This document shows, one piece after another, positions 16,550 to 60,011 of a stretch of 64,000 nucleotides of DNA. The first letter of the stretch is position 1. Every line of letters begins with the position of its first letter. The notes beneath the pieces were generated by a model, which saw only the letters and a list, made by a program, of their open reading frames with translations, ran no database searches and was not told where the DNA came from. The translations under genes and the position numbers were made by a program. The DNA is from Euprymna scolopes (taxonomy: Eukaryota): NCBI GenBank assembly GCA_053919585.1, contig CM132788.1. One strand, written 5' to 3'.

Positions 16550-16561
16550 AGCTATTTCGGC
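16550..16561 (+). promoter_or_regulatory. Primer-binding site complementary to tRNA-Phe nt 1-12
   Basis: AGCTATTTCGGC abuts the 5' LTR CA and is absent after the 3' LTR. Its reverse complement GCCGAAATAGCT is the 5' end of metazoan tRNA-Phe(GAA). Confidence 0.8.
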
Positions 16562-17274
16562 GTATCAAGCAATTAACATGGCTGAGTGGAGACTGAGCAC
16601 TCAGATGTTGAGACCCTTTACTGGGGAGGGCGACCTGATTAAGTGGCTGGAGAAATTAAAAATGGTGGCAAAGCTGCAAAAGATAGAAGATGTGGTCACC
16701 CTGCTGCCGCTATACTTAGAGGGGGAAGCCCTCACGATTTACCAGCAGATGCGAGATGAAGACAAGGAAGACCTCGCCTTAGTAGAGCAAAGGCTGAAAT
16801 TGGCCTTCGCGGAGGGCCCATTTGAAGCACTTCGCAAGCTGTCAAGTTTGAGGTGAACCGGCGAGTCCGTTGATGTCTTTGCGGCAGAGATCAGGAGACT
16901 GGCAGGGTTGGCTGGTTACGTGGGGAGGAGCCTGGAGATGACGGTAAAGCTGTACCTAGTGAACGGCTTCCCAGAGGAAATCTCTGCGAACATGCAGAGA
17001 ATCACGGGGATCCATTCTATGGAAGTGGACGATCTCTTGGTCCACGCCAGAGTCCTAGTGAAAAATGTTAAAAGCCCAATCGTGGCTGCAGCTGTGAGTG
17101 GAAATATGTGCATGAGGCCTCACTTGAATGAGAGGCAGCCGGCGAGGCGACAGGAGGGGAGACCTGCCATCAAGTGTTTCCGGTCCAGGGTCCTCATCTG
17201 ATCAAGGACTGCAAAGAGCCGAGACCGGGGATCACGTGCTACCGATGTGGACAAGTGGGGCATATTAGCCGCTA

Positions 17275-20187
17275 TTGTGTTGCTGCACGGGACCAGGGAA
17301 ACGAGTGAAGGGGAGCTATTGCGCCAGTGGTTACCCCTTCTGTGTGGAAATGGCGCATGATGGAACATTGCCTCGGTTACCGGTGGTAGTCAATGGGAAG
17401 AGAGCCATAGCCCTTGTCGACACAGGCTGCACTACAATGCTGTTAGCAAGGAATGTCGCGAGGTCATGGAGCGGAACCAGGATTATTAGGACCGTGGATG
17501 GCAGGGATGTGAAATGCCTAGGAGAGACGACAGCGGAAGTAATGGTGCAAGGGGTGCCCATTGGACTGCAAGCCCTGGTGTTGAATCATCTGGTCGGTGG
17601 TGTCGACGTGATTATAGGTATGAGTGCAATTAACCGACTGGGGGGCACTACGTTAAGAGGGGGCCAAGTGACGTTTGGACGTCTCGGCGCAGTGGGGATG
17701 GCAGGAGTGGAAGGTGATAGAACCGTCAGAACCCCAAAACCGGAGGTTTGCTGCATTGAGGACAAAGATTTCCTGGCGAAGTTTGATGGCGTGAGGTGTA
17801 CGGTGGAATGGAAATGGATTTCCGGGCCCCCAGAACTACGGAATAAGGTGGGCTGCTACGAAAACACCCTGCGAGGAGAAATAAGAAAAGGATTCGAGGA
17901 AGAAGTGGAGAGGTGGATAAAAGAAGGAATTCTGAAACCGTGGACAGGGGAAGAAAAAGATGTGTTGCCACTACTGGCGGTTGTTCAGCCTACCAAAAAC
18001 AAGATTAGGCCCGTGCTGGATTTTAGGGAATTGAACAGACACGTAGCCTGCCACACTGGAACGGGGATCGACGTATGTGAGGATGTCATGAGGAAATGGA
18101 GAAGAATGGGGCGGGCCACTAAGATTGTCGATCTGAAATCGGCATATCTGCAGATCCATGTAGATGAAAAACTCTGACAGTACCAACTGGTCCGGTACAA
18201 GGGGCGGGTGTATTGTCTGACGAGGTTAGGCTTTGGGCTGAGTTCATCCCCCAAAATTATGACTGCCGTGCTGAAGACAGTGCTGAGCAAAGACTGTACA
18301 GTGGAGGAGGCCACTAGCTCGTACATTGACGACATCCTGGTGGAGGAGGCAGAGGTGACAGCAGAAAAAGTAAGAAGCCATGTCGAGAAGTATGGGTTAA
18401 CCGCAAAACCGGCGGAGGCCCTAGATGGAGGAGCGACGCTGGGGTTGAAACTAAGGCGAGATGGAAAAGAAAGCCTTGTCTTCGAACGAGGGAATGCAAT
18501 ACCCGAAGTCGGATCTGAGCTGACGAGGCGAGAACTCTTCTCAGTCTGCGGGAGGCTGGTCGGGCACTATCCTATCGCTGGCTGGCTCGGGATAGCATGC
18601 AGCTTTATTAAACGACAAACAGGCACTGATGATTGGGAAGGCCGTGTGACGAAGGAGGTCATGAACATGCTGCAAGAAGTCATTGCGAGAGTGAGGAATG
18701 AGGACCCAGTGAAAGGGAAATGGTATGTCAGCGGCGAAGACGCAGGTGTGGTTTGGTGCGATGCCAGTAACCTGGCGTTGGGCGTCGTACTAGAGATAGG
18801 AGGTGTAAGCGTGGCTAAGAAAATCAACGACTTCTCCCATATCAACGTAGCAGAACTAGATGCCGCTATAAAAGGAATCAATCTGGCCCTGAAATGGGGA
18901 TTGAAAATAATTGAAGTCAAAACCGATTCGGCAACAGTAGCGTCGTGGATTCGGTTGGCAGTAACTGGCGATAAGAGAGTTAAGACAAGGGGTGCTGCAG
19001 AAATGCTGATCAAGCGCAGACTCGGAGCGCTCACCAACCTGATAGCGGAATTCCAGTTGAGAGTATCTGTTGTGTTGGTCCCGTCAGAAAAAAACAAGGC
19101 GGATTCGATGACACGCGTGAAGAAGGCCTGGCTGCAGGAGGGAAAGGAGATCTCCTCGGCATGCTGTGCAGGGGAAGAAGTCAAAGAGTCACACGAAATG
19201 CACCACTTTGGTCGAGAACGAATGTTATTCCTAGCCAGAGAGGTTTACCCGGAGACCACCGAGGAGGAGGTTAGGGAGGTGGTGGAGAACTGTCGAGAGT
19301 GCCAATCAATTGACCCTGGACCGTCCAGACACGAAGCAGGAGAGCTACACGTTGCGGAGGACTGGAAGCGATTGGCCATTGATGTGACAAACTATCACCA
19401 CAAATTGTATCTGTCGATGGTCGACTGTGGACCGGGAAGGTTTGCCATCTGGAGAGAGATCAGGGCAGAAGCTGCATGGGCGATCGGAGGGGTCATCGAG
19501 GAGATAGTTTTGGAGAGAGGGCCGGTTGAGGAACTCTTAATGGACAATGGCCCCGCTTTCTGATCAGAAGCCTTTAAAGGGGTGTGCGATAAGTGGGGAG
19601 TAAGGCAATTTTTCAGAGCAACGTATCGGCCGAGTGGCAACGGAACAGTGGAGAGGAATCATCGCACGATTAAAGCCGCTGCGGAAAAAAGCAACGTATC
19701 ACCCATAGAGGCGGTGTTTTGGTACAACATCTCGCCGAAGACCAAACAAGATGAGACAACTGTGCCTCATAGGGCCGTTTTCACATATAAGTGGCGGCAT
19801 TCGTGCAACAAAACAGCAGAAATTGAGAGTGAAGAAGCCACTATCAAAGTAGGTGAAGAGGTGTGGGTGAAACCCCCCAATGCACAGTGTACCACTCGTT
19901 GGAAAAGAGGGGTCGTAACAGGATTGCAGTCGAAGAACAATGTGATGGTGAATGGCGTTCCCTGGCATATCTTAGACCTGCGTCGTGTGACATTGCCGGT
20001 ATGCAGTGAGGGCAGTGAAGAAGAAGAAATCGAGGGCCACCGAGAAGCAAATGATGCTGCTCGACCTGACTTAGGCCCGCGTTGTAGTGAACCTGAAAAC
20101 TTTAACCCCCGAGAAGTTGTCCTCCAGAGGCCTCGACGTGAGAGGAGGCGGCCTGCTTGGATGGAGGATTACGAAGTATCCTATTGA
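17275..20187 (+). pseudogene. pol: pol of element C (PR-RT-RH-IN), one frame with two premature stops
   Basis: ORFs 17275-18177, 18208-19563 and 19582-20187 are in the same frame, separated by single TGA codons. Confidence 0.9.
17296..17340 (+). promoter_or_regulatory. -1 ribosomal frameshift signal at the gag/pol junction
   Basis: Slippery G GGA AAC in the gag frame (Q-G-N-E-stop), then hairpin GAAGGGG-AGCTATTG-cgc-CAGTGGTT-a-CCCCTTC. Conserved in element E (~39287-39331, minus). Confidence 0.75.
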
Positions 20188-20659
20188 TCTCGAAGATCAG
20201 GGGGGCGTGTGGTGTAAATGAAGAAAAAAAGAAACAAGAACGACCGACCGCGTTTTTGTGTGGCTTACCTCGTGTTCATAATGAAGAAGAAAGAAACAAA
20301 AATGGCTGCCCTGTTTCTTTATATGCCTACAGGGTGACCACGAGGTATACAAATGAGATGCTCCTGATTGGAGATAAAAGAGGAGTGATTTGGGGAAGGA
20401 AGGTATTCTGAAGTTAGATTGCGAGCAGAGAAGTTGTATTTGTAGAAGAGAAAAGTCGGATTCGGGGAGAGAAAAGCTAAAGTTGCAGAAGTTCGTTTTG
20501 GAGTGGAGAGAAGACGCGTCAAGTGGTAACCAGAAGGTGAAAGTTCGGACAGCAGTGTCACGCAATCGACATCCAACTGATGAATAATCTTGCGTGGCCC
20601 ACCGAATATTGACTCCCACCCCACCTTTTGTCTTTCAATATTTATTCTGCATGGATCTG

Positions 20660-20850
20660 CCGTGATTGGTCAGGTAACCATTACTAAGTTGCTGTCGGTT
20701 GAAACCTGACTCGTTACGACTACATGTGCTAAAAATAGAAAGGACTATTTTCAAGCAATAAAGAGAAAACACAAAACTTCATCTTTCACAAATTAAACAA
20801 AAAAAAAACAAACTATTATTTCGAAACACCGAAGATACTTTTAACTGTAG
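20660..20850 (+). promoter_or_regulatory. Candidate promoter and non-coding first exon of the IMPase-like gene
   Basis: Reverse CCAAT (ATTGG 20665-20669), unique non-TE sequence, donor TAG|GTAATA at 20850/20851 pairing with acceptor CTAACTTCAG| at 21263. Confidence 0.35.
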
Positions 20851-22904: not shown

Positions 22905-24085
22905 AAATGCGGTTGACCGTACAACCAAATGTGGCCCAATGACGTAGCCCCTTTTAAGGGAGCTGGGGGCTGCTACATTAATAACCCCTATATCTAGCTT
23001 CTAACCTTGTGCCTGACTTTGTGATGCAGTTATAAACGTTTCATGCAGGTGTTTTTTTGGGTTTGGGAACGTTAGATCATGTCGGTTGGGTTTGAGTGAC
23101 AGGTGTTATGAAACTTTTAAAGGTCAGATTTACACGCGGATATCTGAAGTTGAAAACTAAAACATTGTGTGAAAAGCATGCTTCTCTCTCTCTCTCTCTC
23201 TCTCTCATTCTCTCACTCTTTCTTTCTCTATTTCTCTCATTGACTTCCTTTCTCTCTCTTTCAATGAAGAAAGAGAGAAATTAAATATAATTTGATTGTT
23301 GTAAAGACAGTTGAGATTTGCTCGCCGTACGCGATGGGTCGACTAAATATGTTTCCTAACTTGTTAACTGTTTAATAAATTATCTATATTTTTATAAAAT
23401 GTATCTTGTCGCTGTTTTTATACAAGTGTTCGATTTCAGCATACCATTAATGCCGACGACAGAAAGCTGCACTGAACACGCAACAAGCGACGATGGGAAG
23501 ATGCCTGCAATGACCACACATAATGCGACCCATACCAAACAGTTATAGCCGACGACGGATCGACCCGTTATCGTTGTGTTTCCAGCATGTGTCTATCGTT
23601 TAGATATTGTTGGATATCGTTCATTCCCCGTGGAGCTGGTTGCATTCCCAAGACGTTCATCAACCAAGTAACCCTTCTGGGGAGCGATAGTACTACATTG
23701 TTGCCGTTAATCCAGGATTGTTTCTCGCATGAGAAACAAGCACGACCCTATGGGAAAATCCACGGACACAAGGAAAAAAAAATCAACCACTAGACAAATA
23801 AAAATCCACGGACACAAAAACTAAAGAAAAGAAACACAAGATTAGTCAGTCAAAGTCCAGGGAAACACAACAACGAAGAACTCAACTCAAAAACAGCCAC
23901 TTCAACCCAGCATCTACAGAAAAAAAGACACCTGAACTCTTAAGAAAAACTAAGGTAGGTGACTATTTTCTCTGCTCTTTTTGTTACTCTGCAAATTTTT
24001 TGGTTTTAATAATTTGTAAAAATTATTTTGTGGATAGAGCTTTTTGTTTAAACGTCGGCTATTTAAAAATATACATTTAGACAAA

Positions 24086-36108: not shown

Positions 36109-39100
36109 TGTCACACCCCACAATCTGAACGTCAACAATACGAAATACTTTTCAAGAGAAGATGTTCACGACTCTTTTCTTTTTGCAATCTCCAGGGAAT
36201 TTTCCCCAGCTTTTATATCCTCCTATCTAGAAAAAAAAAAAAAAAAAAAAAGGAAGAGACAGGGGGAAAAAAATAGCTTCTGCCTTCCCAAGATGCCCTT
36301 TGTGTATATAAATGAGCTAGCCATCCTTTCCTTCTTCTTTCCCAAAGAGCGATGCCGATAGGCCCGGTACGTTATTATTTTTTTTTTCTAACGATTACTT
36401 CACACGACCCCCTGATCTTCGAGATCAATAAGACACTTCATAATCCTTCATCCTAGCAGGCCTCCTCCTCTCACGTTGAGGCCTCCGGGGGAAAACTTCT
36501 TGGGGATTGACGTTTTCAGGTTCACTACGGACATTCTCGTCCGGTTCTAAAGAACCACAATGTGGGGCTAAGCCGAATTGGGGTGCATCGTTAGTTTCTT
36601 GGTGAATCTCGACTTCCTCCTCTTCACTGCCATCACTGCGCACCGGCAGGGTTACACGACGCAGGTCTAGGATTTGCCAGGTGACGCCATTCACCATCAC
36701 ATTGTTCTTTGACTGCGTTCCAGTTACGACCTCCCTCTCCCAGTGAGTGGTACATTTTTCATTGGGGGGGGGGGGCTTCACACACACCTCCTCACCCACT
36801 TTAATGGGAGCTTCTTCACTCTCAATTCCTACCGTTTTGTTGCATGGATGCCGCCACTTATATGCAAAGATGGCTCTATGAGACACAGTTGTCTCATCTT
36901 GTCTGGTTTTCAGTGAGATGTTGTACCAAAACACCGCTTCCATGGGTGCAATGTTGCTTTTTTCCACAGCAGCCTTGATGGTGCGATGATTCCTCTCCAC
37001 TATCCCATTGCCACTCGGCTGATATGCTGCCCTAAAAAATTGCCTTACTCCCCACTTATCACACACCTCTTTAAAGGCTTCTGATCGGTAAGCGTGGCCA
37101 TTATCCATTAACAGTTCCTCAACCGGCCCTCTTTCCAAAAATATTTCTTCGATGACCCCTCCGATCGCCCATGCAGCTTCTGCCCTGATCTCTCTTCATA
37201 TGGCAAACTTCCCCGGTCCACAGTCGACCATCGACAGATACAGCTTATGGCGATAATGGGTCACATCAATGGCCAATCGCTTCCAGTCCTCCGCAATGTG
37301 TAACTCTCCTGCTTCATGTCTGGATGGTCCAGGGTCTATCGATTGGCACTCCTGACAGTGCTCCACTACCTCCCTGACGTCCTTCTCGGTGTTTTCTGGG
37401 TAAACCTCTCTTGCCAGGAATAACGTCCGTTCTCGACCAAAGTGGTTAATTTTATGTAACTTTTTAACTTCCTCCCCTGCACAGCATACCGAGGAAACCT
37501 CCTTTCTATCTTGCAGCCAGGCCTTCTTTACCTGTGTTATCGAATCCGCCTTGTTCTTTTCTGATACCTTCAACTGGAATTCTGCTATCAAATCTGTGAG
37601 TGCTCCAAGCCTGCACTTGATCGGCATTTCTGCAGCACCTCTGGTCCTAACTCTCTTATCGCCAGTCACTGCCGACCTGATCCGTGAAACTACTGTTGCC
37701 GAATTGGATTTGATTTCAATCGTTTTCAATCCCCACTTCAGAGCCAGATTGATTCCTTTCATAGCGGCCTCCATTTTGGCTATGTTGATATGGGAATAGT
37801 TGTTTTTCTTTCTTAGCCACGACGCATCTTTCACAGTTACACCTCTCATCTCTAATACGACGCCCAATGCCAGGCTGCTGGAATTGCACCAAATCACCCC
37901 TCCGTCTCCGCCGCTTTACTGAGTCTTCTTTCATGTCTCTAGCGATGATTTCTTGTAGCATGTTCATGACCTACTTCGTCACATGGCTCTCCCAGCCATC
38001 AGTGCCCATTTGTTTAATAAAGCTGCATGCTATCCTGAGCCAGCTGGCGATTGGATAGTGTCCCACCAGTCTCCCGCAGACCGAGAAGAGTTCTCGTTTT
38101 GTCAGGTCGGTTCCGATTGCGGGTTTTGCATTCCCTCGTCTAAAGACAAGGCTTCCTTTGCCATCTCGGCATGTTTTCAACCCCAACGCCGCTCCTCCAT
38201 CCAGGGACTCCGCCAGTTTTGCAGTCAACCCATACCTCGCCACATGGCCTCTCACCTTCTCTGCTGTCACCTCTGCTTCCTCCATAAGAATGTCCTCAAT
38301 GTATGAACTAGTGGCCTTGTCCACTGTACAGTCTTTACTCAGCACCGTCTTCAGCATGGCAGTCATAATTTTGGGGGCTGAGCTTGGCCCAAAGTCTAAC
38401 CTCGACAGGCAATACATCTTCCCCTTGTACCAGACCAATTGATGTTGCCAGAGTTTTTCATCTACATGGATCTGGAGATAAGCCAACTTCAGGTCAACAA
38501 TCTTAGTGGCCCACTCCATCCTCCTCCATTTCCTCATAACCTCTTTGCATACATCAATCCCCTTTCCAGTGTGGCAGGCTATGTATCTGTTTAATTCTCT
38601 GAAATCCAGTACCGGTCTAACTTTATTCTTTGTGGGTTGAACAACTGCCAGTAATGGTAGCACTCCTTTATCTTCCCCTGTCCACGGTTTCAGAATTCTC
38701 TCCTCTATCCACCTCTCCACTTCTTCTTCGAATCCTTTTCTTATTTCTCCTCGCAGTGTTTTCTCATAGCAGCTTACTTTCTTTCGTAGTTCCTGAGGCC
38801 CGGAGATCCATTTCTATTCCACCGTCCACCTCTCACCATCGAACCTCGCCAGGAAATCCTCGTCCTCGATGCAGCAAGCCTCCGGTTTTTGCATTCTGAT
38901 ATTTCTATCACCTTCCACTCCTGCCATTCCTACTGCATCGAGGCGTCTGAAAGTTACTTGGCCCCCTCTCAACCTAGTGCCCCCCCCCGTTGGTTGATCG
39001 CACTTACACCTAAAACCCCATCAACATCACCAACCAGACGATCCAACACCAGGTCTCGTAGTCCAATAGGCATACCTTGCACCAGTGCTTCCGCTGTTGT

Positions 39101-40073
39101 CTCTCCTAGGCATTTCACCCCCCTACCATCCACGGTCTTAATACTCCTGGCTCCGCTCCATGATCTTGCGACATTCTTCACTACCAACATCATGGTGCAG
39201 TCTGTGTCAACAAGGGCCATGGCTCTCTTCCCATTGACTACTACCGGTAACTGAAGCAACGTTTCGTTGTGTGCTATTTCCACATAGAAGGGGGAACCAC
39301 TGGCGCAATGGCTCCCCTTCACTCGTTTCCCTGGTCCCATGAAGCAATGCAATAGCGGCTAATGTGCCCCACTCGTCCACATCGGTAGCAGGTGACCCCC
39401 GGTCTCAGCTCTTTGCAGTCCTTGAGCAGGTGAGGACCCTGGTACCGGAAGCACTTGATGGCAGGTTTCCCTTCCTGTGGCCTCACTGTCTGTCTCTCGT
39501 CATTCAAGTGGAGCCTCATGCACTTATTTCCACTCACAGCTGCAGCCACGATTGGGCCCTTGATATTCTTGACTAGGACTCTGGCGTGGACCAAGAGATC
39601 GTCCACTTCCATCGTATTGATCTCAGTGATTCTCTGCATGTTCACAGAGATTTCTTCTGGGAAGCTGTTCACTAGGTATAGCTTTACCATCATCTCCAGG
39701 CTCCTCCCCACATAACCAGCCAATCCTGCCAGTCTCCTGATCTCCGCAGCAAAGACGTCAACAGAGTCGCCAGTCCACCTCAAACTTGCAAGCTTGCCGA
39801 GTGCTTCAAATGGACTCTCAGCGAAAGCCAATTTCAGTCTTTGCTCCACTGAGGCAAGGTCTCCCTTATCTTCATTACGCATCTGCTGGTAAATAGTGAG
39901 GGCTTCCCCCTCTAAGTAGAGCGGCAGCAGGGTGACCACATCTTTGATTTTTTGCAACCTTGCCACCATCTTTAATTTTTCCAGCCATTTAATTAGGTCA
40001 CCTTCCCCAGTGAAGGGTCTCAACATCTGAGTTGAGAGTCTCCAGTCAGCCATGTTTACCTGCTTGACTCGCC
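36109..40073 (-). mobile_element. LTR retrotransposon E, close relative of C; 5' LTR and most of PBS deleted
   Basis: 3' LTR 36109-36404, PPT AAGATCAGGGGGTCG, intact gag, fragmented pol highly similar to C. LTR sequence differs from C. Confidence 0.92.
39319..40053 (-). CDS. gag: Gag of element E (244 aa, open)
   Basis: MADWRLSTQMLRPFTGEGD.., two zinc-knuckle-like motifs (CFRYQGPHLLKDC, CYRCGRVGHISRYC), ends QGNE*. Confidence 0.88.
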   Translation of the reverse strand: MADWRLSTQMLRPFTGEGDLIKWLEKLKMVARLQKIKDVVTLLPLYLEGEALTIYQQMRNEDKGDLASVEQRLKLAFAESPFEALGKLASLRWTGDSVDVFAAEIRRLAGLAGYVGRSLEMMVKLYLVNSFPEEISVNMQRITEINTMEVDDLLVHARVLVKNIKGPIVAAAVSGNKCMRLHLNDERQTVRPQEGKPAIKCFRYQGPHLLKDCKELRPGVTCYRCGRVGHISRYCIASWDQGNE

Positions 40074-40886: not shown

Positions 40887-43874
40887 TGTGGGAAAAGCGT
40901 GTGTGTGCCTTGTAGGGATAATTCGCTTGACATAGCAATCAAAAGGGAAATAATTCTATAAAGAAAGTTATCATCTTTTATAGATCCTAAAAAGACAAGA
41001 GAGTTTCACTGGAGGCACAGAAAATAATATGGCGCTTCGCTTGGCACAGGAATATCGTTCTGTAAATAATTAATGTTTCTGCCGTAAATGAATTATATTT
41101 AAATTATAATAAGTTGGTTCATTTAATTTTTTGAATTCCAATGATTCTGACAATCCATTCTCCGAATACAATAACAGGAAAAAAATGGCGACTCACAGTT
41201 ACTTTTGTGCTTGACAGTCATGCATGAGTAACACAAACTCTCACTGTTTCTATGCAAATGGGACTATCTTAGTGCATAAAAGGAATGGTGAAGAGGACGG
41301 AAGGAAGGAGAGGTAATGTGGACAAGAAAACGTACAATAGATTGTTTAAGTCGATTAGAAAAAATGTAGACAAAAAAGATCACAGAACTTTATTGAAACT
41401 AACTTTCAGACTAGAAGTTATTTCGACTGTATATTACCTTTTGGTGATGAAGGGCAACATTGTTGATGTCCTACGGATTCTGGAGCTTAGTGATGCTGCG
41501 ACTAATATACCCATTATCGAGTAGGATATGACATAAAGGTTTACGTCACAAGATCTCCAGCTATGGTATAGCTGGAAATGTCTTCTCAATTATTAAATCA
41601 TTTCTCTCTGATAGGTTCATAAGAGTACTAGTTGATGGGCAAAAATCAGAAGCTCACAGTATTAATGCTGGAGTCCCTCAGGTGTCCATCCTGGGCCCAA
41701 CTCTTTTCCTGATCTACATTAATGATCTTCCTAATCACATCCTTACATCATTCATAGACATTTTTGCTGATTACACTATCATCTATGGTAGCACATCTAA
41801 GCCCATAAACGACCAAGTTCTCTCTGATTCTCTCTCCTCTGATCTTGAGCACGAGGTACAATGGGGAAATGAGTGGCCGGTTACTTTTAATGCATCTAAA
41901 ACCAAGCTTCGATCTTTACATCATCAACGTTCTGACCCCCATCTGGCATCAATTGAAATGAATGGTTCTCGTCTTGGTGAGGCCTCATGTTTTGACAAGC
42001 TTCTGGGCTTGACCTTTACTCCTGATCTGAAATGGAACACGTACATCAAATCTGTTGCCAAGGCCGTTGGAAAAATAGTGGGATCCTTCTATCGATCCAG
42101 TAGATATCTCACTGCTGATGGAATTCTCTATCTATGTAAGAGTCAGGTACGTCCAGGGATGGAGTACTATTGCCACATCTGGGTAGGAGCTGCTAGAAAG
42201 GACTTGTCCTGCCTTGATAGAGTTCAAAATAAACTTCATAGCCTAATAGGAGATGCCCTTTTCTCTTCCCTGCAACCTCTATCTCACAGAAAAGATGTTG
42301 CGAGTTTGTCTCTGCTTTATCGTTATTTTCATGGCAAGTGCCTGACTGAGCTTCAATCTATGGTCTAGTTGAAAACACTATCAATAATTTCCCCCACTCT
42401 TTATCTGTGCCTAACCCTAAACGTAGATTCCATGAACAAAGCTTCTTTCTTAGAACTACATGCCTATGGAATTGTCTTCTGTTTTCCTGCTTTCCAGCTG
42501 ACTACAATATGGTTGTCTTCGAGTCCAACGTAAACAAGTTTTTGATGATCCGTTCCACTTAAGTTAACAAATTTACCAAATTTCCATTACTAACAATTAC
42601 TATATTGTCCAATTGACTACTGTACACTCTTAACCCTTATCCTCGAGTGGTCTCTGGGCTTTGATAAGTGGTTATGCCTATGTAAAAAAAAAAAAAAATT
42701 CGGAACTTGTGTGTGAGCTTTACACTATGAAGAATATTGAGCACATCCTGCCATTGAGATTGTAAGGTGGAGCTTTAGCCATATACAGGTAACTTAGTCA
42801 GGAATAGAAAGCAGATGCAAAACAGATCAAGCAAGCTTTCATAACCGCATATGCTACTGTTGCATTTAATGCAAATGATTAGTTTATCCCTCGACAATTC
42901 GTCCAGATGAAACAGTAGACAAGTTTGTTTTTTTTTTGCTTAGCTGTGATGCCTAGCTTGGTTGGAGGACCATTGTCCAAATGTGGGTCATTGGTTCACA
43001 TACACATGTGTCTCTGAACTACCGCAACATGTTAAACATTTACTATGTGCCTCATCCAGGATAGAAACAATGAGTGCAAAATAACTGTTAACCCAAAGCT
43101 GTCAAAACTGGCAACACAAGCCTTACAGAATTGGCTGCCACTTTTATCAAACGGACACCTTCACAATCAAAGGCACATAATGGTGGTGTAGCATTGGAAG
43201 CAAATGGGACTGTCATTAGAGATGTGTGTTGGTTACATCCAACTAACAATGCTCAGCACATCAATCCAGCTAAACTTGATGTGGCACTCAAAGGAGTCAA
43301 TTTGGCCCTTTATTGGGAGACAACAGTGTTACACTTGGTCACTGATTCAGCATGTCACTGATTAACTGGAAAGGCATGCGTAAACATGAGTGCAGCTTGT
43401 GAGATGCTAGTCAGGCGATGGTTAGGAACCTTGCAATCGTTGGTGAGAATTTTCTAACTATCATTGACTATGATTCCTCTAGATTTTCAACATGACAACC
43501 ACTGCAACAACAAGATGTGACAACTATTATCCAACAGTTAGAGAATATTTTCCTTGAGCAAGGCCTGCTAACTAATAACAACACTGCATTCAGTAGTAAA
43601 GAATTTGGTGAATTTGTGAAGAATTGGGATGAGCATCTGCGGTTTTGCTGTGCATATTCGCCGTGTGGAAATGGAATTGTGAAATGATGTCATAGAACCA
43701 TTAAAACTATCACAGCCAGAAAGAATTGTTCAATATTGAAAGTGGTCTACTGGCACAATGTCATCTAGAAAAATAACGTTTCACCTTCCTCTGTGTCAGC
43801 TGATGCACTACATAGTCTGAATAAAGGGTGTTGAGGTTAACCCGCTGCCTGAAACAGAGATAACTGGAGGGAAG
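40887..43874 (+). mobile_element. Old, heavily deleted element F of the tRNA-Phe-5' PBS lineage, split by a LINE
   Basis: LTR ~40887-41415 (similar to 48283-48573, with a ~245-bp insert), PBS-like AGTTATTTCGAC 41416-41427. gag start continues after the LINE (ELVCELYTMKNIEHILPLRL). RH HINPAKLDVALKG, IN remnants, purine tract before 43875. Confidence 0.7.
41523..42698 (+). mobile_element. 5'-truncated CR1/L2-group LINE, relative of 31008-32080
   Basis: SILGPTLFLIYINDL, FADYT, MEYYCHIW; poly-A at 42684-42698. Confidence 0.9.
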
Positions 43875-45031
43875 TGTGATATTCATCAAAGAAGCAACCG
43901 GCCACGTGTTTGTGCCTTGTGTGGCTATACAAACGATAAATAAATAATCAACACTGACCCCAGAAATGTCCTTATGTCTGTTTGTCCTGTGGGCTAGTAA
44001 GAAAAAAGAAAAATCAAAAAGATCCAAGATGGCGTCCGTGATCTTCTAAAGCCTAGTCTCACATGGTCGCATGATACACCTGCTAATCAGCCATACTCAG
44101 ATTGGGAAAAGCGTCCAAACCTGTATACAGTGAATAGTGCTCTGCGTCTTATCAGACATTTTGATACAACTCGTATAGTGAAATTTGCTTTGCATCTCGT
44201 AAGACATTTTCTTTTTGTTTTGCTACAAGCTATTTTGGCCATTTTTGTTTTCAATCAAGTGGTGTTGGGAGATAAAAAGGCAATGACTGAATCGAAGTTT
44301 GATTTGAAGCTGATACCCGAATTTGACGGGTCCACGTCTGTTGTTGACTGGGTTGAAAGGGTTGAGTTGACCTGCAACCTTTGTGAAGTAAAGAGGATTC
44401 CCTTGAGATTGGCTGGAGGCGCCTTGAGTGTATATCAACAATTTAGTGCTGCCGAGAAGACTGACTTAACGGCAAGTAAAAACGCACTGTACAAGGCATT
44501 TGACATGGATCCATGTACAGCTTATCAGAAATTTGCTTCGAGGAGACTCATGGCAGGAGAAATGGTGGATGTCTTTTTTGCAGAGCTGAAAAAACTTGCA
44601 ATCTAGTTTGGTGGTGGCGTATCGGAATGGACATATGCATATGCGTTTGTGGCCAGCCTTCCAGCCTTCCAACGTAGTAAACAACTGCTGAAAGTCTCCA
44701 CCAACATTTCAGTAACGCCTATGGAACACTTGCTGGAATGTGCTCGAGCCATTATCAGAGATGAGGAAGACCTGGGGAACCAGTGCAGACAGCCTAGAAT
44801 AGTGCAGGGGAGACTCCTAGTATGAGCTCCATGACCAATGGGAGATGTTTATGCTGCGGTCATTTTGCGAAAAGTTGCAATGACAGGGAATGGGAATGCG
44901 CACACTGTTTGCAATGCATTCCAAAGGTATTGGACACTTAGCTCCTAATTGTGTGGGAAATGTGTCAGGGGATAGGACATCAACGTTGCTCTGCTCCCTG
45001 GACAAGATGTAAGTGAGGCACAACCAACAAT

Positions 45032-45034
<3 letters not shown>

Positions 45035-45110
<76 letters not shown>
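45035..45110. repeat. (TA)n microsatellite within element G
   Basis: About 38 TA units with one TG interruption. Confidence 0.95.
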
Positions 45111-47804
45111 CGTAAACCAAGTGCCCTGCTCAGCTCTTCTTGATTCAGGCTGCTCAAATATCACAGTGAATGCCAGACTATGTCGAGCCTGAAATAAGAA
45201 AAACATCAAAGTCACCACAATAGGTGGTGAGATGCAAGTATGCTGTGCAGCCAGAACCATACAGATTTATACAAACTCCAGTGTGGGCGCAGAAATCAAT
45301 GTGTTGCTAATGCAAGGGAATTTGCTGGGGTTCGCCTTATTACTATGATATGACGCCATCAAGGTACTGCGGAAAGTTGTCATTGAATGAAATGGGAGCA
45401 TGCACTTTTTGGAAGCCCCAGAATGTGCTGCAATCCACATTGATCAGACTGATTTCAAGGTGGACTACGACCATCGACAGAAGGCCTGAACTGCATAATG
45501 GAAGTGGACTGAAGGAAGGGTGCCAACCGAACTTAAGAATGGTGTTGTGGAGTACCCCATACCTGACGAGGCTCATGATGAATACGAGCAAGAACTTGAG
45601 GTGTGGGTCTGAGATGGATGGTTGATCCCCTACTCTGACGACAAACTTAAACCTCCCAAAGGTCTGATACACTTAATGGCGGTGGGCCAGCATAATATAT
45701 AAAAAATTAGATTAGTGCTGGATTATCGTGAACTCAACAATCCCATTGAGGCTTATACTGCTGATGCTGATGTGTGCGCCAGCAAATTGAGGGTATGGTG
45801 CCAGAAAGGCTCCAATATGTCAATATAAGATTTGCAGAAGGCCTATTTGCAGGTGCGAGTTGATGAGATGTTGTGGCCGTTCCAGACTGTGTGATTCCAG
45901 GGCCAGAGGTAATACTTGACACGACTCGGCTTTGGTCTGAATGTGCCATCATAGATCATGAAAACTATTATGAATGTTGTCACAGGAAAAGACCATTGAG
46001 GATGCAACATTAGCCTACAGTAATGATATGCTAATGAGGATGTACAGTCTGCATCATGTGTCAGAAAAATTAGCTCAGTTCGACCTGAAGTGCAAGGATC
46101 CTGAACATCTAAAAGATAGAGCATGCATATTGGGGTTAGATATCTGTGAGGAAAGAGGCACCCTACGATGGATACGTGGCAGTGGGGTTCCAGGCAGGCC
46201 TGACGTTATTACACGGCGGACCGTTTTTAACTCGTGTGGGAAGCTTGTTGGTCACTTACCAGCCTGTGGTTGGCTCCGTGCAGACGTAGGTGCTATTAAA
46301 TGTAGAGCAAATTTAGTGACCTCAGGTTTGGATGATGTACCTGATGATTCTCTCCTAGCTTTAATGATAATGGAAACTCTGGAGAAAGTGGATGAAAAGA
46401 ACCCTATCTGTGGGAAGTACTGTGTCGATGGTGACGATGTGAATGTGTGGGTCGACACGAGTTCATTGGTATTGGGAGTCTCATTAGAGCAAAGAGAAAA
46501 TGTGTTTGAGGATGCATCTTGTCTGTGACCTGTAAGTGATGCTCAGCACATCAACCTGGTGGAGTTGGACGCTGTTGTAAAAGGCATAAATCTGATACTG
46601 CAATGGCAGTCCAAAAAATTGTACACAGATTCTCTGTGTATCTACCACTGGGTGTCTGACACACTTTCAGAACGAGCAAGAATCCGTACCAAGGTGACCA
46701 GTGAAATGTTGATCCAGTGAAGACTACACATACTGAATAGTCTGATCTCTGAGCCCGCACTATCATTGAGTGTAACGCTGGTAGTATCACACTGTAATTT
46801 TTCTGACCAATTAACCCATGTGCCTCACAATGCCATGAAAATGGGCGTGGAACACACTGTTCAATCCTATGCAGTTGCAATTGGTGCGATGAGCCTATGC
46901 CAAATAAAGGAGATTCATGCACCGGACATCCAGGTATCAAGAGGACCCTGTATTTTGTGAGGTGCATGAACCCGGCAGTGACAAGGGCAGATGTCAAGCA
47001 GATTGTCAAGCACTGTGAGGCATGTCAATTTGTTAATGTTGCACCAGATAAATGGCAGAAAGGGTGATTGGAAGTGAAGGATGTATAGCAATTGATGGCG
47101 ATGGATATCACCTATTACAGTAGAAAGCCCTTTTTAACTCTTATTGATTGTGGATCTACCCATTTTGTGGTGTGGTGGCAAATGTTGTTTGTCAGTCATC
47201 GTCCATCTTTTCTGAGCAAGGTGCACCGGAAGAGGTTTTGATGGACAATGATGCCGCTTCTTGCAGCCAACAAGTCTGGCAATTGTTAGATGAATGGGGC
47301 CCCCGACTATGATTGTGATGTGCTCATGTGCCATCAGTGAATGGAGCCATTGCAGCATTAAGAGAATTGCTGCCAGAAAGCAATGCACCATTACAAAGGC
47401 CACGTATTGGTATAACATCACACCAAAGGATCAGAAGTCACCTACAACAGCGTCTTCCAATGCTATACACACATACCATGTCAGAGTAAAGGGAATTGAC
47501 ACTATACAGCCAATCGATGGAACACACAACAGATATGGAATAGGGGATCCAGTCTTGGTGAGAACCCCAGGAAACCGGTGCACCACCAAGTTCAAACGGG
47601 GACGAATATTTGGGGTGATTAGCCAGCAGTCGATCCTAGTTGATGGAACTCCACGCCATGTGCGACCTTTTCCCGGCTGCTGAGATACATCACACAACTA
47701 CAGAGGAAAGCAATGAATCATCAAGTGATGAACTGCTGACAAACGCGATCAGTGACCCCCCCCCCCCTCGCAAGAGAGTTTTGGCAATAGTTCGTTTGAC
47801 AAGG

Positions 47805-47862
47805 CAGAACCAGAACCGGAACCAGAATCAGAACCAGAATCAGAACCGGAACCAGAACCAGA
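47805..47862. repeat. Hexamer tandem repeat (CAGAAC/CAGAAT/CGGAAC) in the pol C-terminus of G
   Basis: About 9-10 units, directly visible. Confidence 0.9.
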
Positions 47863-47976
47863 GATGATGAATGTTCCCCTTTGCAGAAGTGAACGGAATA
47901 AAAGACCAACCCCGCAATGCACTCTGTGTGATCATGAGATCAGGGGGGGGGGTGTAATATTCATCAAAGAAGCAAG

Positions 47977-55420: not shown

Positions 55421-56052
55421 GACACCATATTGCATTATTGTGTTGATCAGTCAGGATGGCTGCGATAATAAATAGATAAAACGAGAGCTAGGTAAACACA
55501 TGCTTTTATTTACAAGGTGCGATTATGAAGAAGAACAATAACTTTTCTCAACTTCAAGTTATAACAAGGAGACATAACTATCACAATAGAGTATCAGCCA
55601 CAAGGTAAATACTGGATATCAGCAGAAAATTATGTAATGAAATCCATCTGTTGTAGTTCTCTTGGGGTATTTTTCCTTGAAATGGATGACGTGAGGAAGG
55701 CAATCAAACGCATGTGGTCCATAAAAATAGTTAATTGTCTTCCAACATGACGTAAAATGGGGGGGGGGGAGTCACCTCAAATACACAAACGGAATGTTCA
55801 AGAAAGATTATCGCTACAGTCCTCTGTCTCTTCTCTCTTGGCTGGCCGGGAATCATCTCCCAGCATCCAGAAATGAACATCGTTTTATAGGTTCCATCTT
55901 CACGCACACACAAGATTATGCGAGAACGGACGAAATAAAAATACTGGCCGCCATGTTTGTTCTTCCTTTTCTTCGCCTGTACTCACTCGCTGAGCACCCA
56001 CGGTAAGACTTCTCTTTCTTGCTTCTAACCACATGCCTCCCTGATCTCAAGA

Positions 56053-58330
56053 TCACATTTCATAGTCTCTCATCCACTGTGGCGGTCGCCTCTCTCTACT
56101 TGGCCTCTGAGGTGTCTCGTCCTCCTCCTGTGGCTGCACACTCCCCTCCACTGCTTCGCCCTCAACTGGTCTGACGTCAAGAATGTGCCTCGGGACTCCT
56201 CCCACCACAATGTTGTTACTAGTGTTCCTCCCAGTCACGCGACCCCTACTCCATTGTGTGGTGCAGCGCGCCCCCGGTGGCTTCACCCATACCTCGTCCC
56301 CGAGTTTAATTGTCCCTGTGGCCTCTACTTCTCGGCTTGCCGGCTCCACCCTGGGATGCCTCCAGGAATATGCAAACATTGACAGTTGCGGGACCGTCTC
56401 TGGTACTTGTCCCAGTTTAGGCGACATGTTATACCAGAAGACGGCTTGCTCAGGTTAGGTGCCTCCTCTTTCCGCAACTGCCTTTATGGTGCGGTGGTTT
56501 CTCTCTACGATCCCGTTGCCACTAGGTCTGTAGGCAGCTCTGAAAAATTGTTGGATCTTCCATTTCTTCAGTACTTCTGTCACTGCTACTGACTTGAACG
56601 CAGTCCCGTTGTCGGTTAACAACTCTTCCACGGGGCCTCGCTCCAAAAACACCTCATCAAAGATTGCCGCTATTTCATTGCCTGTTCCTCCACGTAGCTT
56701 CTTCCATAGGGCAAATCGCCTGGGCCCACAGTCAATCATGGTAAGGTAAAGTCCACCCCTGTAATGGGTGACATCGCATGCCAGTCTCTCCCAGGTCCCA
56801 CTCACCTCCAATTGGCCAGCTTCATGCGTGCTTGGAGCAGGATCAATCGACTGACATCTGTCGCATGTCCTGACCACTTGCCTCACCTGCTCCTTGGTGA
56901 TCCTTGGGTTGACTTTTTTCACTAAGTACCAAGTCCTCTCTACCCCCATATGGTGCAAATTGTGCAGTTCTCGCACACCAACATCATCTAGATCCGATGC
57001 AGCAACAACATCTTTCTTTGGCAACAGCCAACTCTTCTTCAGTCTCGTGAGAGCATCTGCTCGGTTCTTTTCAGAAGCCACCATGTCTACGCGAAGCTTC
57101 AAACAAAACTCTTGCATCAGCTCAGCCAGCATCCCAAGCCTGCGCTTCACTAACATCTCAGCAGCCCCTCTCGTTTTTATCCTTTTTTCGCTTGAAATGA
57201 GAGACTTTAGCCAAGCAAACACCGTGGCGGAGTCTGTTTTGATGCAGATGTCACGTAGTCCCCATTTCAAGGTCAGATTGACTCCTTTTATTGTCGCGTC
57301 TAATTCCGCCACATTGATGTGGCTGACGTCATTCTTTTTCCTCAACCAGGCTGCATCTTCTGCAACTACTCCTCCAATTTCCAAAACGACCCCTGTTGCA
57401 ATGCTGCTCGCATCGCACCACACGACTCCATCCAATGTTCGCGGTATGTTCCAGGTTCCCCGGACTGGGTCTTGCCGTTCTGCTTCTTTCAGGAGCTCTT
57501 CCATCATGGCGACCGTTCTTTCTCCCACCTTATCATTCCATCCTTGTCCTTTGGCGTGTCTCTTTATGTAGCTGCATGCTGGTCTAAGCCAGCTAGCAAT
57601 GGGGTAATGTCCGATCAACTTTCCGCATATGGAAAAAAGTTCACGTCTGTTGAGCTCCTGCTTCAGCTGTGGGATCTCGTTTCCCCTGTGAAACTCTAGG
57701 CCGCCTGACGCACCTCGTTTCAGTTTTAGGCCAAAAGCAGCCCCTCCGTCTAATTTTTCCGGCTCTTTGGCGACCAACCTGAACTTCTTCAAATGAGCTA
57801 CCACCTCCTTGGCAGTTACCACAGTTTCATTCACCAGAATGTCGTCTATGTATGAGCTCACTACCCCATCTCCCTTTCCCATTGTCTCCAGAATCTTCCT
57901 GAGGATAGTTGACATAATCTTGAGTGCCGAATTTAACCCGAACCCTACTCGCGTAAGGCAGTAGGTTTTGCCTTTGTACTTGACTAACTGATATTTCCAG
58001 AGTTTCTTGGCAACATGGAGTTGCAAATAGGCAGATTTTAGATCTACCAATGTAGATGCGCCATTCATCTGCCTCCATTCCCTAATGGTCTCACTGCACA
58101 CATCTACGGTGTCGCCTCCCGTATGGCACTTAACATGGCCGTTCAGCTCTCGGAAATCCAGGACCGGTCTTACTTTCCCTTTAGTTGTTTGCAGAACGGC
58201 CATCAACGGCAAAATGCCCGACTCCACATCATCCGTCCAAGGCATCAGTATCCCTTCCTCAATCCATTGGTCGACTTCCTGCTCAAACTCCTTTCTCGCC
58301 CCTCCTCTAAGCGAATTTGTGTAGCACGCC
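56053..58330 (-). CDS. pol: RT-RH-IN of element J (open ~620 aa, one frameshift near 56455)
   Basis: VRPVLDFRELN, SYIDDIL, WCDAS, HINVAELDA, HHMG..CDRC, LTDNG, GIVERNHRT. Confidence 0.9.
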
Positions 58331-58903
58331 ACCGAAGCATGCGATCCCCGGGTTTGGCAGATTCCTGCCCACATCCTGCTGTACCGTTGCTGTCGTTCCT
58401 CCAGGCTCCGTGGGCTGGGTGCTCACTAAAATTTTCGCAGTTCTAAGCAGCTCACTCACATCCAGCGTCTCCACCCCCGGTACCTGCTGCAACCTTTTCG
58501 ATATTTCTTCCGGTAACCCGGTAACAAAAGTCATCTTGACTACGTGACTCGTGGCATATCCTCTGATGCCCGACAACTCAACCAATCTCCTTATCTCATT
58601 CGCATAGACATCCACAGATTCACCAGTCCACCTCTTCTCTTTCAACTTATTAAAGGCCTCGAAAGGCCCCTCTGCAAAAGCTTCGATCAGTCGACCCTTG
58701 ATGGCGTCTGCATCACCCTGTTCCCGCTCACTGAGCTCCAAATAGAGGGCCAGTGCGTCCCCTTCCAGAAACAGTGGTATTACTGCGGCCACATCATCCA
58801 GCTTCTGAATCCTTGCTACAAGGTCCACTTTTTTAAGCCACGCCACCACATCACCGTCGCCATTAAAAGGCTTAATCATACTGCTTAAACCTGCGTTGGC
58901 CAT
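58307..58903 (-). CDS. gag: Gag of element J, truncated at the zinc knuckle
   Basis: MANAGLSSMIKPFNGDGDVVAWL.., homologous to C/E gag. ATG lies 1 nt after the PBS. Confidence 0.85.
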   Translation of the reverse strand: MANAGLSSMIKPFNGDGDVVAWLKKVDLVARIQKLDDVAAVIPLFLEGDALALYLELSEREQGDADAIKGRLIEAFAEGPFEAFNKLKEKRWTGESVDVYANEIRRLVELSGIRGYATSHVVKMTFVTGLPEEISKRLQQVPGVETLDVSELLRTAKILVSTQPTEPGGTTATVQQDVGRNLPNPGIACFGGVLHKFA

Positions 58904-60011
58904 CGCCGAAATAGCTTGACGTAAAATGGGGGGGGGGGTTCACCTCAAATACACAAACGGAATGTTCAAGAAAGATTATCGCTACAGTCCTCTGTCTCTT
59001 CTCTCTTGGCTGGTCGGGAATCATCTCCCAGCACCCAGAAATGAACATCGTTTTATAGGTTCCATCTTCACGCACACACGAGATTATGCGAGAATGGACG
59101 AAATAAAAATGCTGGCCGCCATGTTTGTTCTTCCTTTTCTTCGCCTGTACTCACTCGCTGAGCACCCACGTTAAGACTTCTCTTTCTTGCTTCTAACCAC
59201 ACAACATAAAAAAATGTTTTACTGCTAAATACTACATAGTGAGCAGTTTACCCCCAAAGGTGCAGCGTAGCAGTAAAGAAAGACAGTAGTCACATTTGAA
59301 CATCCGTTAACTGGTGTAGTACAGTCCCAATGGCGACATCAGAAGCATAAGTTGAAAGAAAAATCTTAGCTGTAAGGTCAGGATTGATGAAAGAAAGTTT
59401 TGTGAAATTCACTAAAGCTCCTTTGGAGGTATGAAAAGCTGTCATGGCTTCGTCTGTGAGAGACAAGGTTTTCTTTTGAGTGAGTCTGTAAGCTTTAAAC
59501 ATTTATAAAAAAAAACGGCGATAATAATGAGTCCAACATAACGATGTAATTACTGTATGGGAAAATCCTAGACGGCTTGCACTTTTGCATGTAACGGCTA
59601 TATTTGTCGATTCAGTGCCCAAGGAAATTTAGAGTCAACACTGAATTCACACTTTGTGACATTAACTTTTAATCTGAAGAATTGTGAACATCGGAAGACT
59701 TCAGTTATATGCATCAAATGTTCTTGAAAGGATTTTGCAATCAATGTACGTGAAAACAAAGGGTAGCCCATGAAGGATCTCATTGATGAACATTTGGGAG
59801 GCCTGGGTAGCATTACACAGCCCAAAAAAGTAGTCATGTAAACTTTTACAGTCCGAAGGGAGTATAAATAGTAGTCTTAGCAATGTAAGGACGGATTACA
59901 TTGATGATAGAGACTGACAACTAAGAGGAAAAGTCATCCAAATCCGTAGCTGCATTGAGAGCATGCTAATCACCACACGGTCTCTAGTCTACTTCCATTT
60001 TCTTACCATAT

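What the first reader, a model, noticed from the sequence alone, without database searches (positions are those of the whole stretch)
16550..58916. LTR retrotransposon lineage apparently primed by the 5' 12 nucleotides of tRNA-Phe
Seen: the same 12-mer directly follows the 5' LTR terminus in four elements with largely dissimilar LTRs and diverged Gag: AGCTATTTCGGC at 16550-16561 (+) and 58905-58916 (-), AGCTATTTTGGC at 44228-44239, and AGTTATTTCGAC at 41416-41427. It does not follow the 3' LTRs of C or J. Known: its complement GCCGAAAUAGCU is nt 1-12 of metazoan tRNA-Phe(GAA). Ordinary PBSs start TGG and pair with the tRNA 3' CCA end, as the Leu/Arg PBSs elsewhere in this window do. The exceptions I know are copia-type half-tRNAiMet priming and Tf1 self-priming. 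Complementarity stops at tRNA position 1 on one side and at the LTR edge on the other. Inference: minus-strand synthesis is primed by a ~10-12-nt 5' tRNA fragment cut in the D arm, a priming mode I do not know to be described.
Basis: partly seen in the sequence, partly recalled or inferred. Interest (0 to 1): 0.92.

Follow-up and report, generated by a model that had tools for sequence, protein, structure and literature searches.

The report
LTR retrotransposons primed by tRNA 5' end
Four retrotransposon copies in this window, and all their relatives that could be checked in molluscs, crustaceans and environmental DNA, carry in the primer-binding position a 12-base sequence that pairs with the first 12 bases of a host tRNA (tRNA-Phe here) rather than with its 3' end, which points to an apparently undescribed way of starting reverse transcription.

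Summary
AGCTATTTCGGC, or a decayed copy of it, directly abuts the 5' LTR of four elements with unrelated LTRs. In the two younger copies, 5-bp target-site duplications fix the LTR edge to the base.

The elements belong to a compact (about 4.0-4.4 kb) gag(2xCCHC)-PR-RT-RH-IN LTR-retrotransposon lineage. Relatives occur in cephalopod, sea-slug, mantis-shrimp and crab genomes and on many ~4-kb metagenome contigs. Every relative whose LTR/gag junction was visible has ACA|AGCTAYNNNGGC. Conservation falls to background at -4 and +13. Gag starts 0-44 nt later, so no other primer-binding site fits.

The 12-mer is the exact complement of nt 1-12 of metazoan tRNA-Phe. One relative carries the exact complement of tRNA-Lys3 nt 1-12. 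Only the bases pairing with tRNA nt 4-6 vary. The same few variants recur across the Pol tree, and where hosts are known they follow the host: molluscs TTC, malacostracans CTA.

Tf1-type self-priming is rejected, because no LTR holds a complement.

Best reading: a 5'-terminal 12-nt tRNA fragment, cut in the D stem, primes minus-strand synthesis. This rests on sequence inference only. I found no prior description in the searchable literature.

The parts
16205..16549 (+). Element A, 5' LTR (TGTGG...GACA); target-site duplication TCCAA at 16200-16204
   Evidence: Self-BLAST shows 93% identity to 20208-20571. LTR edges and duplication are read.
16550..16561 (+). Element A, primer-binding site AGCTATTTCGGC, the complement of tRNA-Phe nt 1-12. 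It has no spacer after the LTR. The gag ATG is at 16578.
   Evidence: tRNA-Phe 5' sequence.
16562..20207 (+). Element A internal region: gag, PR, RT, RNase H and IN with frameshifts and stops. The polypurine tract GATCAGGGGGGCG ends at 20207.
   Evidence: Pfam hits. tblastn covers Pol residues 7-895 of P0001. Polypurine tract.
20208..20571 (+). Element A, 3' LTR. It is followed by the duplication TCCAA (20572-20576), not by the 12-mer.
58917..59201 (-). Element B, 5' LTR; target-site duplication TGTTG (59202-59206 on the minus strand)
   Evidence: 97% identity to 55748-56033; edges.
58905..58916 (-). Element B, primer-binding site AGCTATTTCGGC. The gag ATG starts 1 nt later (58903).
56034..58904 (-). 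Element B internal region: gag ORF 58307-58903, and a 639-aa RT-RNase H-IN ORF at 56455-58374. The protease region is missing.
55748..56033 (-). Element B, 3' LTR, followed by the duplication TGTTG (55743-55747)
43875..44227 (+). Element D, 5' LTR (TGTGATATTC...GCTACA). D is nested inside element C.
   Evidence: The LTR start matches 47953-47975.
44228..44239 (+). Element D, primer-binding site AGCTATTTTGGC. It has one C>T change, which still gives a G-U pair with tRNA-Phe G4 (duplex -16.6 kcal/mol). The gag ATG is at 44283.
44240..47975 (+). Element D internal region (degenerate Pol, 29-39% identity to P0001), polypurine tract 47940-47952, and a 3' LTR stump at 47953-47975
41173..41415 (+). 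Element C (old), 5' LTR. Its partner at 48340-48578 is 77% identical.
41416..41427 (+). Element C, decayed primer-binding site AGTTATTTCGAC, followed by a remnant of the gag N-terminus (LPFGDEG...)
36365..40073 (-). A': a second copy of family A (83% identity) with no LTRs. It starts inside the last 4 nt of the 12-mer.

Best explanation
The 12-mer is the minus-strand primer-binding site of a widespread, compact LTR-retrotransposon lineage. It pairs with the 5'-terminal 12 nt of a host tRNA: acceptor-stem 5' strand nt 1-7, U8, A9, and D-stem nt 10-12. In this window and in molluscs that tRNA is tRNA-Phe(GAA).

Proposed cycle:
1. The zinc-knuckle Gag unwinds the tRNA and anneals nt 1-12 to the site.
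2. The tRNA is cut after nt 12. The most likely agent is the element's own RNase H acting at the end of the RNA-RNA duplex, as Tf1 does with its 11-nt self-primer.
3. RT extends U12 into U5, so the LTR ends exactly where the duplex ends.
4. Later, plus-strand strong-stop synthesis copies the 12 RNA bases and runs off at tRNA nt 1. This rewrites the site from the host tRNA at each cycle and sets its length to exactly 12.

Shown: the position, the exact complementarity, the sharp block edges, lineage-wide conservation, recurrent host-linked variants, and the absence of a self-complement.

Inferred: annealing, the cut and its nuclease, the primer length, and the run-off.
For: Position:
- The 12-mer abuts LTR ends fixed by target-site duplications in four independent copies: A, B, Argonauta L001 and Oratosquilla L002.
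- Gag starts 0-44 nt downstream, so there is no room for another site.

Complementarity:
- It is 12/12 to nt 1-12 of human and Drosophila tRNA-Phe.
- The chance of such a match to a tRNA 5' terminus is about 3e-6, or about 2e-4 allowing any tRNA position. The duplex energy is -18.7 kcal/mol.

Conservation:
- 30 non-redundant elements with 30-69% Pol identity all have ACA|AGCTAYNNNGGC.
- Information content is about 0 outside positions -3..+12.
- The one apparent exception, L031, has AGCTATCACGCG.

Variants:
- Variation is confined to the bases opposite tRNA nt 4-6. The part common to many tRNAs (UAGCU) is constant.
- L033 has the exact complement of tRNA-Lys3 nt 1-12.
- The CTA variant is the complement of real tRNA 5' ends. 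Ten bacterial genes beginning GCCTAGATAGCTCAGTYGG were sampled, and 7 were tRNA-Phe.

Host tracking:
- Three mollusc species carry TTC. Four copies from two malacostracan orders carry CTA.
- The CTA elements are not monophyletic: Petrolisthes groups with Aplysia at 90/92 support, and the AU test against crustacean monophyly gives p=0.016.
- On the 53-row tree, 7 states need 11 changes.

Machinery:
- Gag has two CCHC knuckles.
- The RNase H DEDD positions, RT YxDD and IN HHCC/DDE are conserved.
Against: - There are no experimental data of any kind: no strong-stop cDNA, no small RNAs.
- No tRNA gene lies in the window, and the host is unidentified.
- The CTA, CAC, CGC and CCC variants could not be matched to a tRNA of the actual hosts.
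- No nuclease is known to cut a tRNA after nt 12, and a 12-nt primer would be unusually short.
- The first two bases (AG) could instead be an LTR-end dinucleotide, which would leave a 10-nt site.
- The site-finding pattern was partly defined by the motif, so only the flanks of the conservation profile are unbiased.
- The crustacean group for the AU test was named after a first tree had been seen.
Confidence: 0.7

Rival explanations
1. Tf1/Tf2-type self-priming: the first ~11-12 nt of the element's own transcript (start of R in the LTR) fold back onto the site and are cut by RNase H.
For: The site is non-TGG, 11-12 nt long and abuts the LTR, as in Tf1 (from general knowledge of Tf1).
Against: In 34 elements, the best match of the reverse complement of each element's own 12-mer in the 600 nt upstream has 3-5 mismatches. 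The longest exact match is 4-7 nt. Neither is better than shuffles. Self-priming also would not explain identity to tRNA-Phe or tRNA-Lys3, nor the recurrence of the same variants in unrelated LTRs.
Confidence: 0.03
2. The site pairs with the 3' end of some other host small RNA ending ...AUAGCU, and the match to tRNA 5' ends is coincidental.
For: The host tRNAs for four of the six variants are unidentified.
Against: The site matches the very 5' terminus of two different known tRNAs exactly, 12/12. The constant half is the tRNA-universal U8-U12 segment. The variable half lies in the acceptor stem, where tRNA species and taxa differ.
Confidence: 0.06
3. The primer is a pre-existing host 5' tRNA fragment that is packaged as such, rather than a full tRNA cut after annealing.
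For: 5' fragments of tRNA-Phe and tRNA-Lys(UUU) exist in cells (the northern probes).
Against: From general knowledge, described 5' fragments are 14 nt or longer. Extra 3' bases would be unpaired against the LTR-terminal CA, because position -1 is A in 29 of 30 elements where G would be needed.
Confidence: 0.15
4. The 12-mer is a different cis element (an integrase end signal, or a packaging or dimerisation signal), and priming happens elsewhere or in another way.
For: The first bases, AG, and the preceding ACA could belong to an integrase recognition end.
Against: In several elements the 12-mer is the only non-coding sequence between the LTR and gag. It is absent from the 3' LTR junction. Its sequence tracks tRNAs and hosts rather than element phylogeny.
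Confidence: 0.05

Closest known systems
copia / 1731 / Ty5-type priming by a cleaved 5' fragment of initiator tRNA-Met (Kikuchi et al. 1986, cited; Ty5 from general knowledge)
   Same: The primer is a 5' piece of a tRNA whose new 3' end is made by cutting inside the mature tRNA. The site does not start with TGG.
   Different: In copia the cut is in the anticodon stem (about nt 39), and only the 3' part of the fragment pairs. Here the cut would be after nt 12 in the D stem, and the whole fragment down to nt 1 pairs. The tRNA is Phe (Lys3-like and others in relatives), not iMet. The element has the gypsy-type domain order, not the copia-type order.
Tf1/Tf2 self-priming (listed with Maggy, Skippy, Cft-1 and others)
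   Same: A very short (11-12 nt) RNA-RNA duplex lies directly at the LTR edge. The primer 3' end is presumably made by a cut at the end of that duplex. The site length equals the primer length because the primer is copied to its 5' end.
   Different: The primer comes from a host tRNA rather than the element's own 5' end. No self-complement exists.
Canonical tRNA 3'-end priming of Ty3/gypsy elements and retroviruses (TGG... site; described)
   Same: A host tRNA determines the site. The site sits at the U5 edge. LTRs, polypurine tract, target-site duplication and gag-pol layout are ordinary.
   Different: The complementarity is to tRNA nt 1-12, not to the CCA end. The two ordinary gypsy elements in the same window serve as internal controls.
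Ty3/gypsy (Metaviridae) and caulimovirus RT-RNase H architecture
   Same: The order is PR-RT-RH-IN. The model shows RT fingers, palm and thumb followed directly by a single RNase H. The best length-normalised structural match is cauliflower mosaic virus RT (8r0s: TM 0.70/0.68).
   Different: There is no hit to the Ty3-type RNase H Pfam models, which the window's true gypsy element hits at 1e-31. The integrase is closest by sequence to retroviral integrases. The thumb is annotated only as DUF7047. Phylogenetic placement was not tested.

Membership tests
LTR retrotransposon (Ortervirales) in general | Direct LTRs with TG...CA ends, target-site duplication, polypurine tract before the 3' LTR, and gag plus pol with PR, RT, RNase H and IN | tested here: met
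   5-bp duplications in 4 of 4 copies. LTRs run TGTGG...ACA (the Argonauta LTR ends CAAG). Polypurine tract is GATCAGGGGGG. Domains. An intact Argonauta copy has identical LTRs.
Canonical tRNA-3'-end-primed elements | The site begins TGG and is complementary to the 3' CCA end of a tRNA | tested here: not met
   The site is AGCTAYNNNGGC. There is no TGG between the LTR and gag in any copy.
copia/Ty5-type half-tRNA priming | The site is complementary to an internal (anticodon stem-loop) segment of initiator tRNA-Met | tested here: not met
   The complementarity is to the terminal nt 1-12 of tRNA-Phe or tRNA-Lys3. A tool-derived tRNA-iMet sequence was not compared.
Tf1/Tf2-type self-priming | The 5' end of the transcript (within the LTR) is complementary to the site | tested here: not met
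   No complement beyond shuffles in 34 elements.
Tf1/Tf2-type self-priming | The element's RNase H makes the primer by cutting an RNA-RNA duplex | not testable with these tools
   Only the conservation of the RNase H catalytic residues could be checked.
Ty3/gypsy (Metaviridae) | Domain order PR-RT-RH-IN, with a single RNase H directly after the RT thumb | tested here: met
   Pfam domain order. AlphaFold model with pLDDT 85. Fold match to CaMV RT.
Ty3/gypsy (Metaviridae) | Placement inside the gypsy clade on an RT or IN phylogeny with reference elements | not tested
   No reference set was available. The Ty3-type RNase H Pfam models do not hit.
Troyka | CG...CG termini and 3-bp target-site duplications | tested here: not met
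   TG...CA termini and 5-bp duplications.
Odin / lokiretrovirus / retrovirus-type Pol | A tether (degenerate RNase H) between RT and a second, acquired RNase H | tested here: not met
   In the model, three thumb helices (= DUF7047) are followed directly by one RNase H. Only about 450 residues span RT plus RH.

The most novel reading that the evidence does not exclude
A phylum-spanning lineage of LTR retroelements starts reverse transcription from the 5'-terminal 12 nt of a host tRNA (Phe, Lys3-like and others). The primer is released by a cut in the D stem after annealing. This would be a third non-canonical priming mode beside copia half-tRNA priming and Tf1 self-priming. The site is rewritten from the host tRNA at each cycle, so its three variable bases report the host group. 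Host 5' tRNA fragments would then be natural competitors, mirroring the control of ordinary LTR elements by 3' fragments.
Probability: 0.5. Interest if true: 0.9.

Novelty: new variant of a known kind. Interest (0 to 1): 0.82.

Why it matters
Primer choice is one of the few steps where LTR retroelements depend on a specific host RNA. Only three modes are textbook: the tRNA 3' end, the copia-type half tRNA, and Tf1 self-priming.

A fourth mode that uses the tRNA 5' terminus would have several consequences:
- It would explain why standard annotation tools, which search for complements of tRNA 3' ends (e.g. the method), report no primer-binding site for these elements.
- It would give a simple 15-nt signature (ACA + AGCTAYNNNGGC) for finding the lineage.
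- It would pose a concrete enzymological question: what cuts a tRNA after nt 12?
- It would suggest that 5' tRNA fragments, so far without a retroelement link, could regulate such elements.
- It would offer a sequence read-out of host switches.

An apparently intact young copy exists in Argonauta hians, so the idea can be tested directly.

Tried and rejected
- Self-priming: searched each element's upstream 600 nt for the complement of its own site. Nothing exceeded shuffles.
- Dual RNase H / Odin-like architecture: suspected from weak RNase_H and RVT_3 hits plus DUF7047. Rejected after the structure model showed that DUF7047 is the RT thumb and that there is only one RNase H.
- Troyka: rejected on termini and duplication length.
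- BEL/Pao: no Peptidase_A17, DUF1758 or DUF5641 hits even at E<=1.
- Host tRNA covariation:
  - No tRNA-Phe gene lies in the window or in about 90 kb of fetched eukaryotic loci; only a tRNA-Val was found.
  - Full-text searches for the variant 5' ends found only tRNA-Lys3.
  - The prokaryote genome scan found only bacterial tRNAs.
- The viral contig collection holds no relative.
- A second protein search with a CGC-variant Pol returned no host-named relatives.
- The Wilhelm & Wilhelm 2001 review could not be read.
- Ten literature searches found no description of a site complementary to a tRNA 5' terminus.
- The extra window hits at 21368 and 49352 were dismissed as chance.


Full report
**1. 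What is in the window**

The 12-mer AGCTATTTCGGC occurs exactly at 16550-16561 (+) and 58905-58916 (-). It occurs with one mismatch at 44228-44239 and with two at 41416-41427. Hits at up to two mismatches number 10, against 3.5 expected, and no shuffle reached that.

Self-alignment defines LTR pairs for three of the four sites. The fourth has a 5' LTR from 43875 and a 3' LTR stump at 47953-47975 behind a polypurine tract.

For elements A (16205-20571) and B (55748-59201, minus strand), 5-bp target-site duplications (TCCAA and TGTTG) fix the LTR edges. The 12-mer begins at the very next base after the 5' LTR. It is absent after the 3' LTR.

The LTRs of the four copies do not align with one another. 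The remaining near-matches in the window have no LTR context. Two ordinary Ty3/gypsy elements in the window carry TGG-type sites at the expected place, so the unusual site is specific to this lineage.

**2. What the elements are**

Pfam finds an aspartyl protease, RT, DUF7047, an RNase H (weak RNase_H and RVT_3 hits), and an integrase zinc finger and core.

Protein searches find hundreds of relatives at 45-69% identity. They occur in Argonauta hians, Aplysia californica, Plakobranchus ocellatus, Oratosquilla oratoria and Petrolisthes manimaculis, and on very many ~4-kb contigs from ENA, Logan and JGI.

The Argonauta copy (L001) is intact. It is 4407 bp long and its LTRs are identical over the 300 nt compared. 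Its Gag is 236 aa with two CCHC knuckles. Its Pol is 999 aa, in the -1 frame.

An AlphaFold model of the RT-RNase H part (pLDDT 85) shows that DUF7047 is the RT thumb, followed directly by a single RNase H. The best length-normalised structural match is cauliflower mosaic virus RT. The architecture is therefore gypsy/caulimovirus-like, with no retrovirus-type tether.

The integrase is closest by sequence to retroviral integrases. The lineage is not Troyka, which has CG..CG ends and 3-bp duplications. It also lacks the tether that defines Odin and the lokiretroviruses. I could not place it on a reference phylogeny.

**3. The site across the lineage**

I fetched 59 metagenome loci with a Pol profile and seven loci from named genomes. 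Every locus that covers the LTR/gag junction has ACA|AGCTAYNNNGGC. The single apparent exception, L031, has AGCTATCACGCG.

In 30 non-redundant junctions, information content is near zero up to position -4, high from -3 to +12, and near zero again from +13. The motif helped to locate the sites, so only the flanks of this profile are an unbiased result.

Gag starts 0-44 nt after the block. In several elements the 12-mer is therefore the only non-coding sequence between the LTR and gag.

Target-site duplications in the Argonauta and Oratosquilla copies again put the LTR end directly before the block.

**4. What it pairs with**

The complement, GCCGAAAUAGCU, is nt 1-12 of tRNA-Phe(GAA). This is shown by a human primer, a Drosophila 5' probe that ends at nt 1, and a human 5'-fragment probe.

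Variation within the lineage is confined to positions 7-9 of the site, which pair with tRNA nt 6-4. The half that pairs with U8-U12, common to many tRNAs, is constant.

One element, L033, has AGCTATCCGGGC. This is the exact complement of tRNA-Lys3 nt 1-12.

The CTA variant is the complement of genuine tRNA 5' ends. Ten bacterial genes beginning GCCTAGATAGCTCAGTYGG were sampled, and seven are tRNA-Phe. This shows only that such a tRNA exists somewhere, not that the hosts have it.

More distant relatives keep the AGCTA core but carry other acceptor-side sequences.

**5. Host tracking**

All three mollusc species and the window carry TTC. All four copies from two malacostracan orders carry CTA.

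On a Pol tree the Petrolisthes element is sister to the Aplysia element (support 90/92), and the Oratosquilla elements lie elsewhere. Forcing the crustacean elements together costs 16 log-likelihood units (AU p=0.016).

On a 53-row tree, seven states need at least 11 changes. TTC, CGC and CAC each appear in several separate clades.

Repeated arrival at the same few three-base states, out of 64 possible, is what an external template would produce. That template would be the host's tRNA, copied back into the site at each cycle. Free drift of a cis element would not produce this pattern.

**6. Rivals**

Tf1-type self-priming requires the transcript's 5' end, inside the LTR, to complement the site. 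In 34 elements the best upstream match to the reverse complement of the element's own 12-mer is no better than in shuffles.

A different small RNA, or a different cis function, cannot be excluded without experiments. But neither explains the exact matches to the termini of two known tRNAs, nor the host-linked recurrence.

**7. Mechanism proposed**

Gag anneals tRNA nt 1-12 to the site (12 bp, -18.7 kcal/mol). The tRNA is then cut after U12. By analogy with Tf1, I favour the element's own RNase H, whose catalytic residues are conserved. RT extends into U5.

In plus-strand strong-stop synthesis, the 12 RNA bases are copied to the tRNA's 5' end. This would explain both the exact 12-nt length and the stop of complementarity at nt 1.

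From general knowledge, nt 1-12 of eukaryotic tRNA-Phe carry no modification that blocks RT; the only one is m2G10.

An open sub-question is whether the leading AG is part of the duplex or is an LTR-end dinucleotide, which would leave a 10-nt site.

All of these steps are inference.

**8. Novelty**

Ten full-text searches returned only tRNA probes and primers, and reviews that list 3'-end, copia-type and self-priming modes. These searches included the literal 12-mer, its complement and 10-mers. A recent large survey searched only for complements of tRNA 3' ends.

I therefore rate this a new variant of a known kind: tRNA-fragment priming. The caveat is that older subscription literature and Repbase notes were not searchable.

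Noticed in passing
window 36365-40073 (-): A second copy of family A (83% identity) has no LTRs. It begins inside the last 4 nt of the 12-mer and ends about 38 nt into the LTR sequence. Upstream it abuts a BTB-like reading frame (MANMVDLWKKGKFCDATIGNG...), which it seems to interrupt.
   Followed up: partly
window 22929-30664: A 3.48-kb unit is repeated in tandem about 2.2 times at 99.8% identity. Each unit has a 698-aa ORF with retroviral-type aspartyl-protease hits.
   Followed up: partly
window 19-1976: A tandem repeat of roughly 660-bp units, 94-97% identical.
   Followed up: no
window 5411-9090 (-): A copia-type element: a gag of LTR copia type plus a zinc knuckle at 7425-8459, between 88%-identical LTRs. 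Its primer-binding site was not examined.
   Followed up: no
window 10824-15165 and 49846-55415 (+): Two Ty3/gypsy elements with canonical TGG primer-binding sites: TGGCGGCAGCGGTGGGA directly after the LTR, and TGGCGACGGGAATT 6 nt after it. The second hits the Ty3-type RNase H Pfam models at 1e-31. They were used as internal controls.
   Followed up: partly
window 31011-31978 and 41635-42569: Two fragments, 81% identical, of a non-LTR-type reverse transcriptase. The second lies inside old element C.
   Followed up: no
L002:2095-2167 (Oratosquilla oratoria): A tRNA-Val(CAC) gene lies about 200 bp upstream of the element's 5' LTR. No tRNA gene was found near the six other genome copies, so there is no evidence of tRNA-gene targeting.
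   Followed up: partly
L004, L007, L010, L011, L019, L020 and other ~4-kb contigs: Most relatives sit on contigs of about one element length, and these are often circularly permuted (Pol, then LTR, then primer-binding site). L007 holds two copies of the site 4017 nt apart. This fits collapsed LTRs in assembly, one-LTR circles, or tandem copies; which of these applies is unknown.
   Followed up: no
L001:2625-7031 (Argonauta hians): An intact copy with LTRs identical over the 300 nt compared and open gag and pol frames, so it was probably active recently. Its LTR ends CAAG instead of ACA.
   Followed up: partly
L058:1744, L059:2044, L005:3233: Some relatives carry CA|AGCTACGCATGA (L058 and L059, about 33% Pol identity) or CA|AGCTATTCTTTC (L005) at the same place. 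The core is the same but the acceptor-side sequence differs. The tRNAs they would pair with are unknown.
   Followed up: no
Pfam DUF7047 (e.g. L001 Pol residues 437-495): In the structure model this domain of unknown function corresponds to the helical thumb subdomain of the reverse transcriptase.
   Followed up: partly
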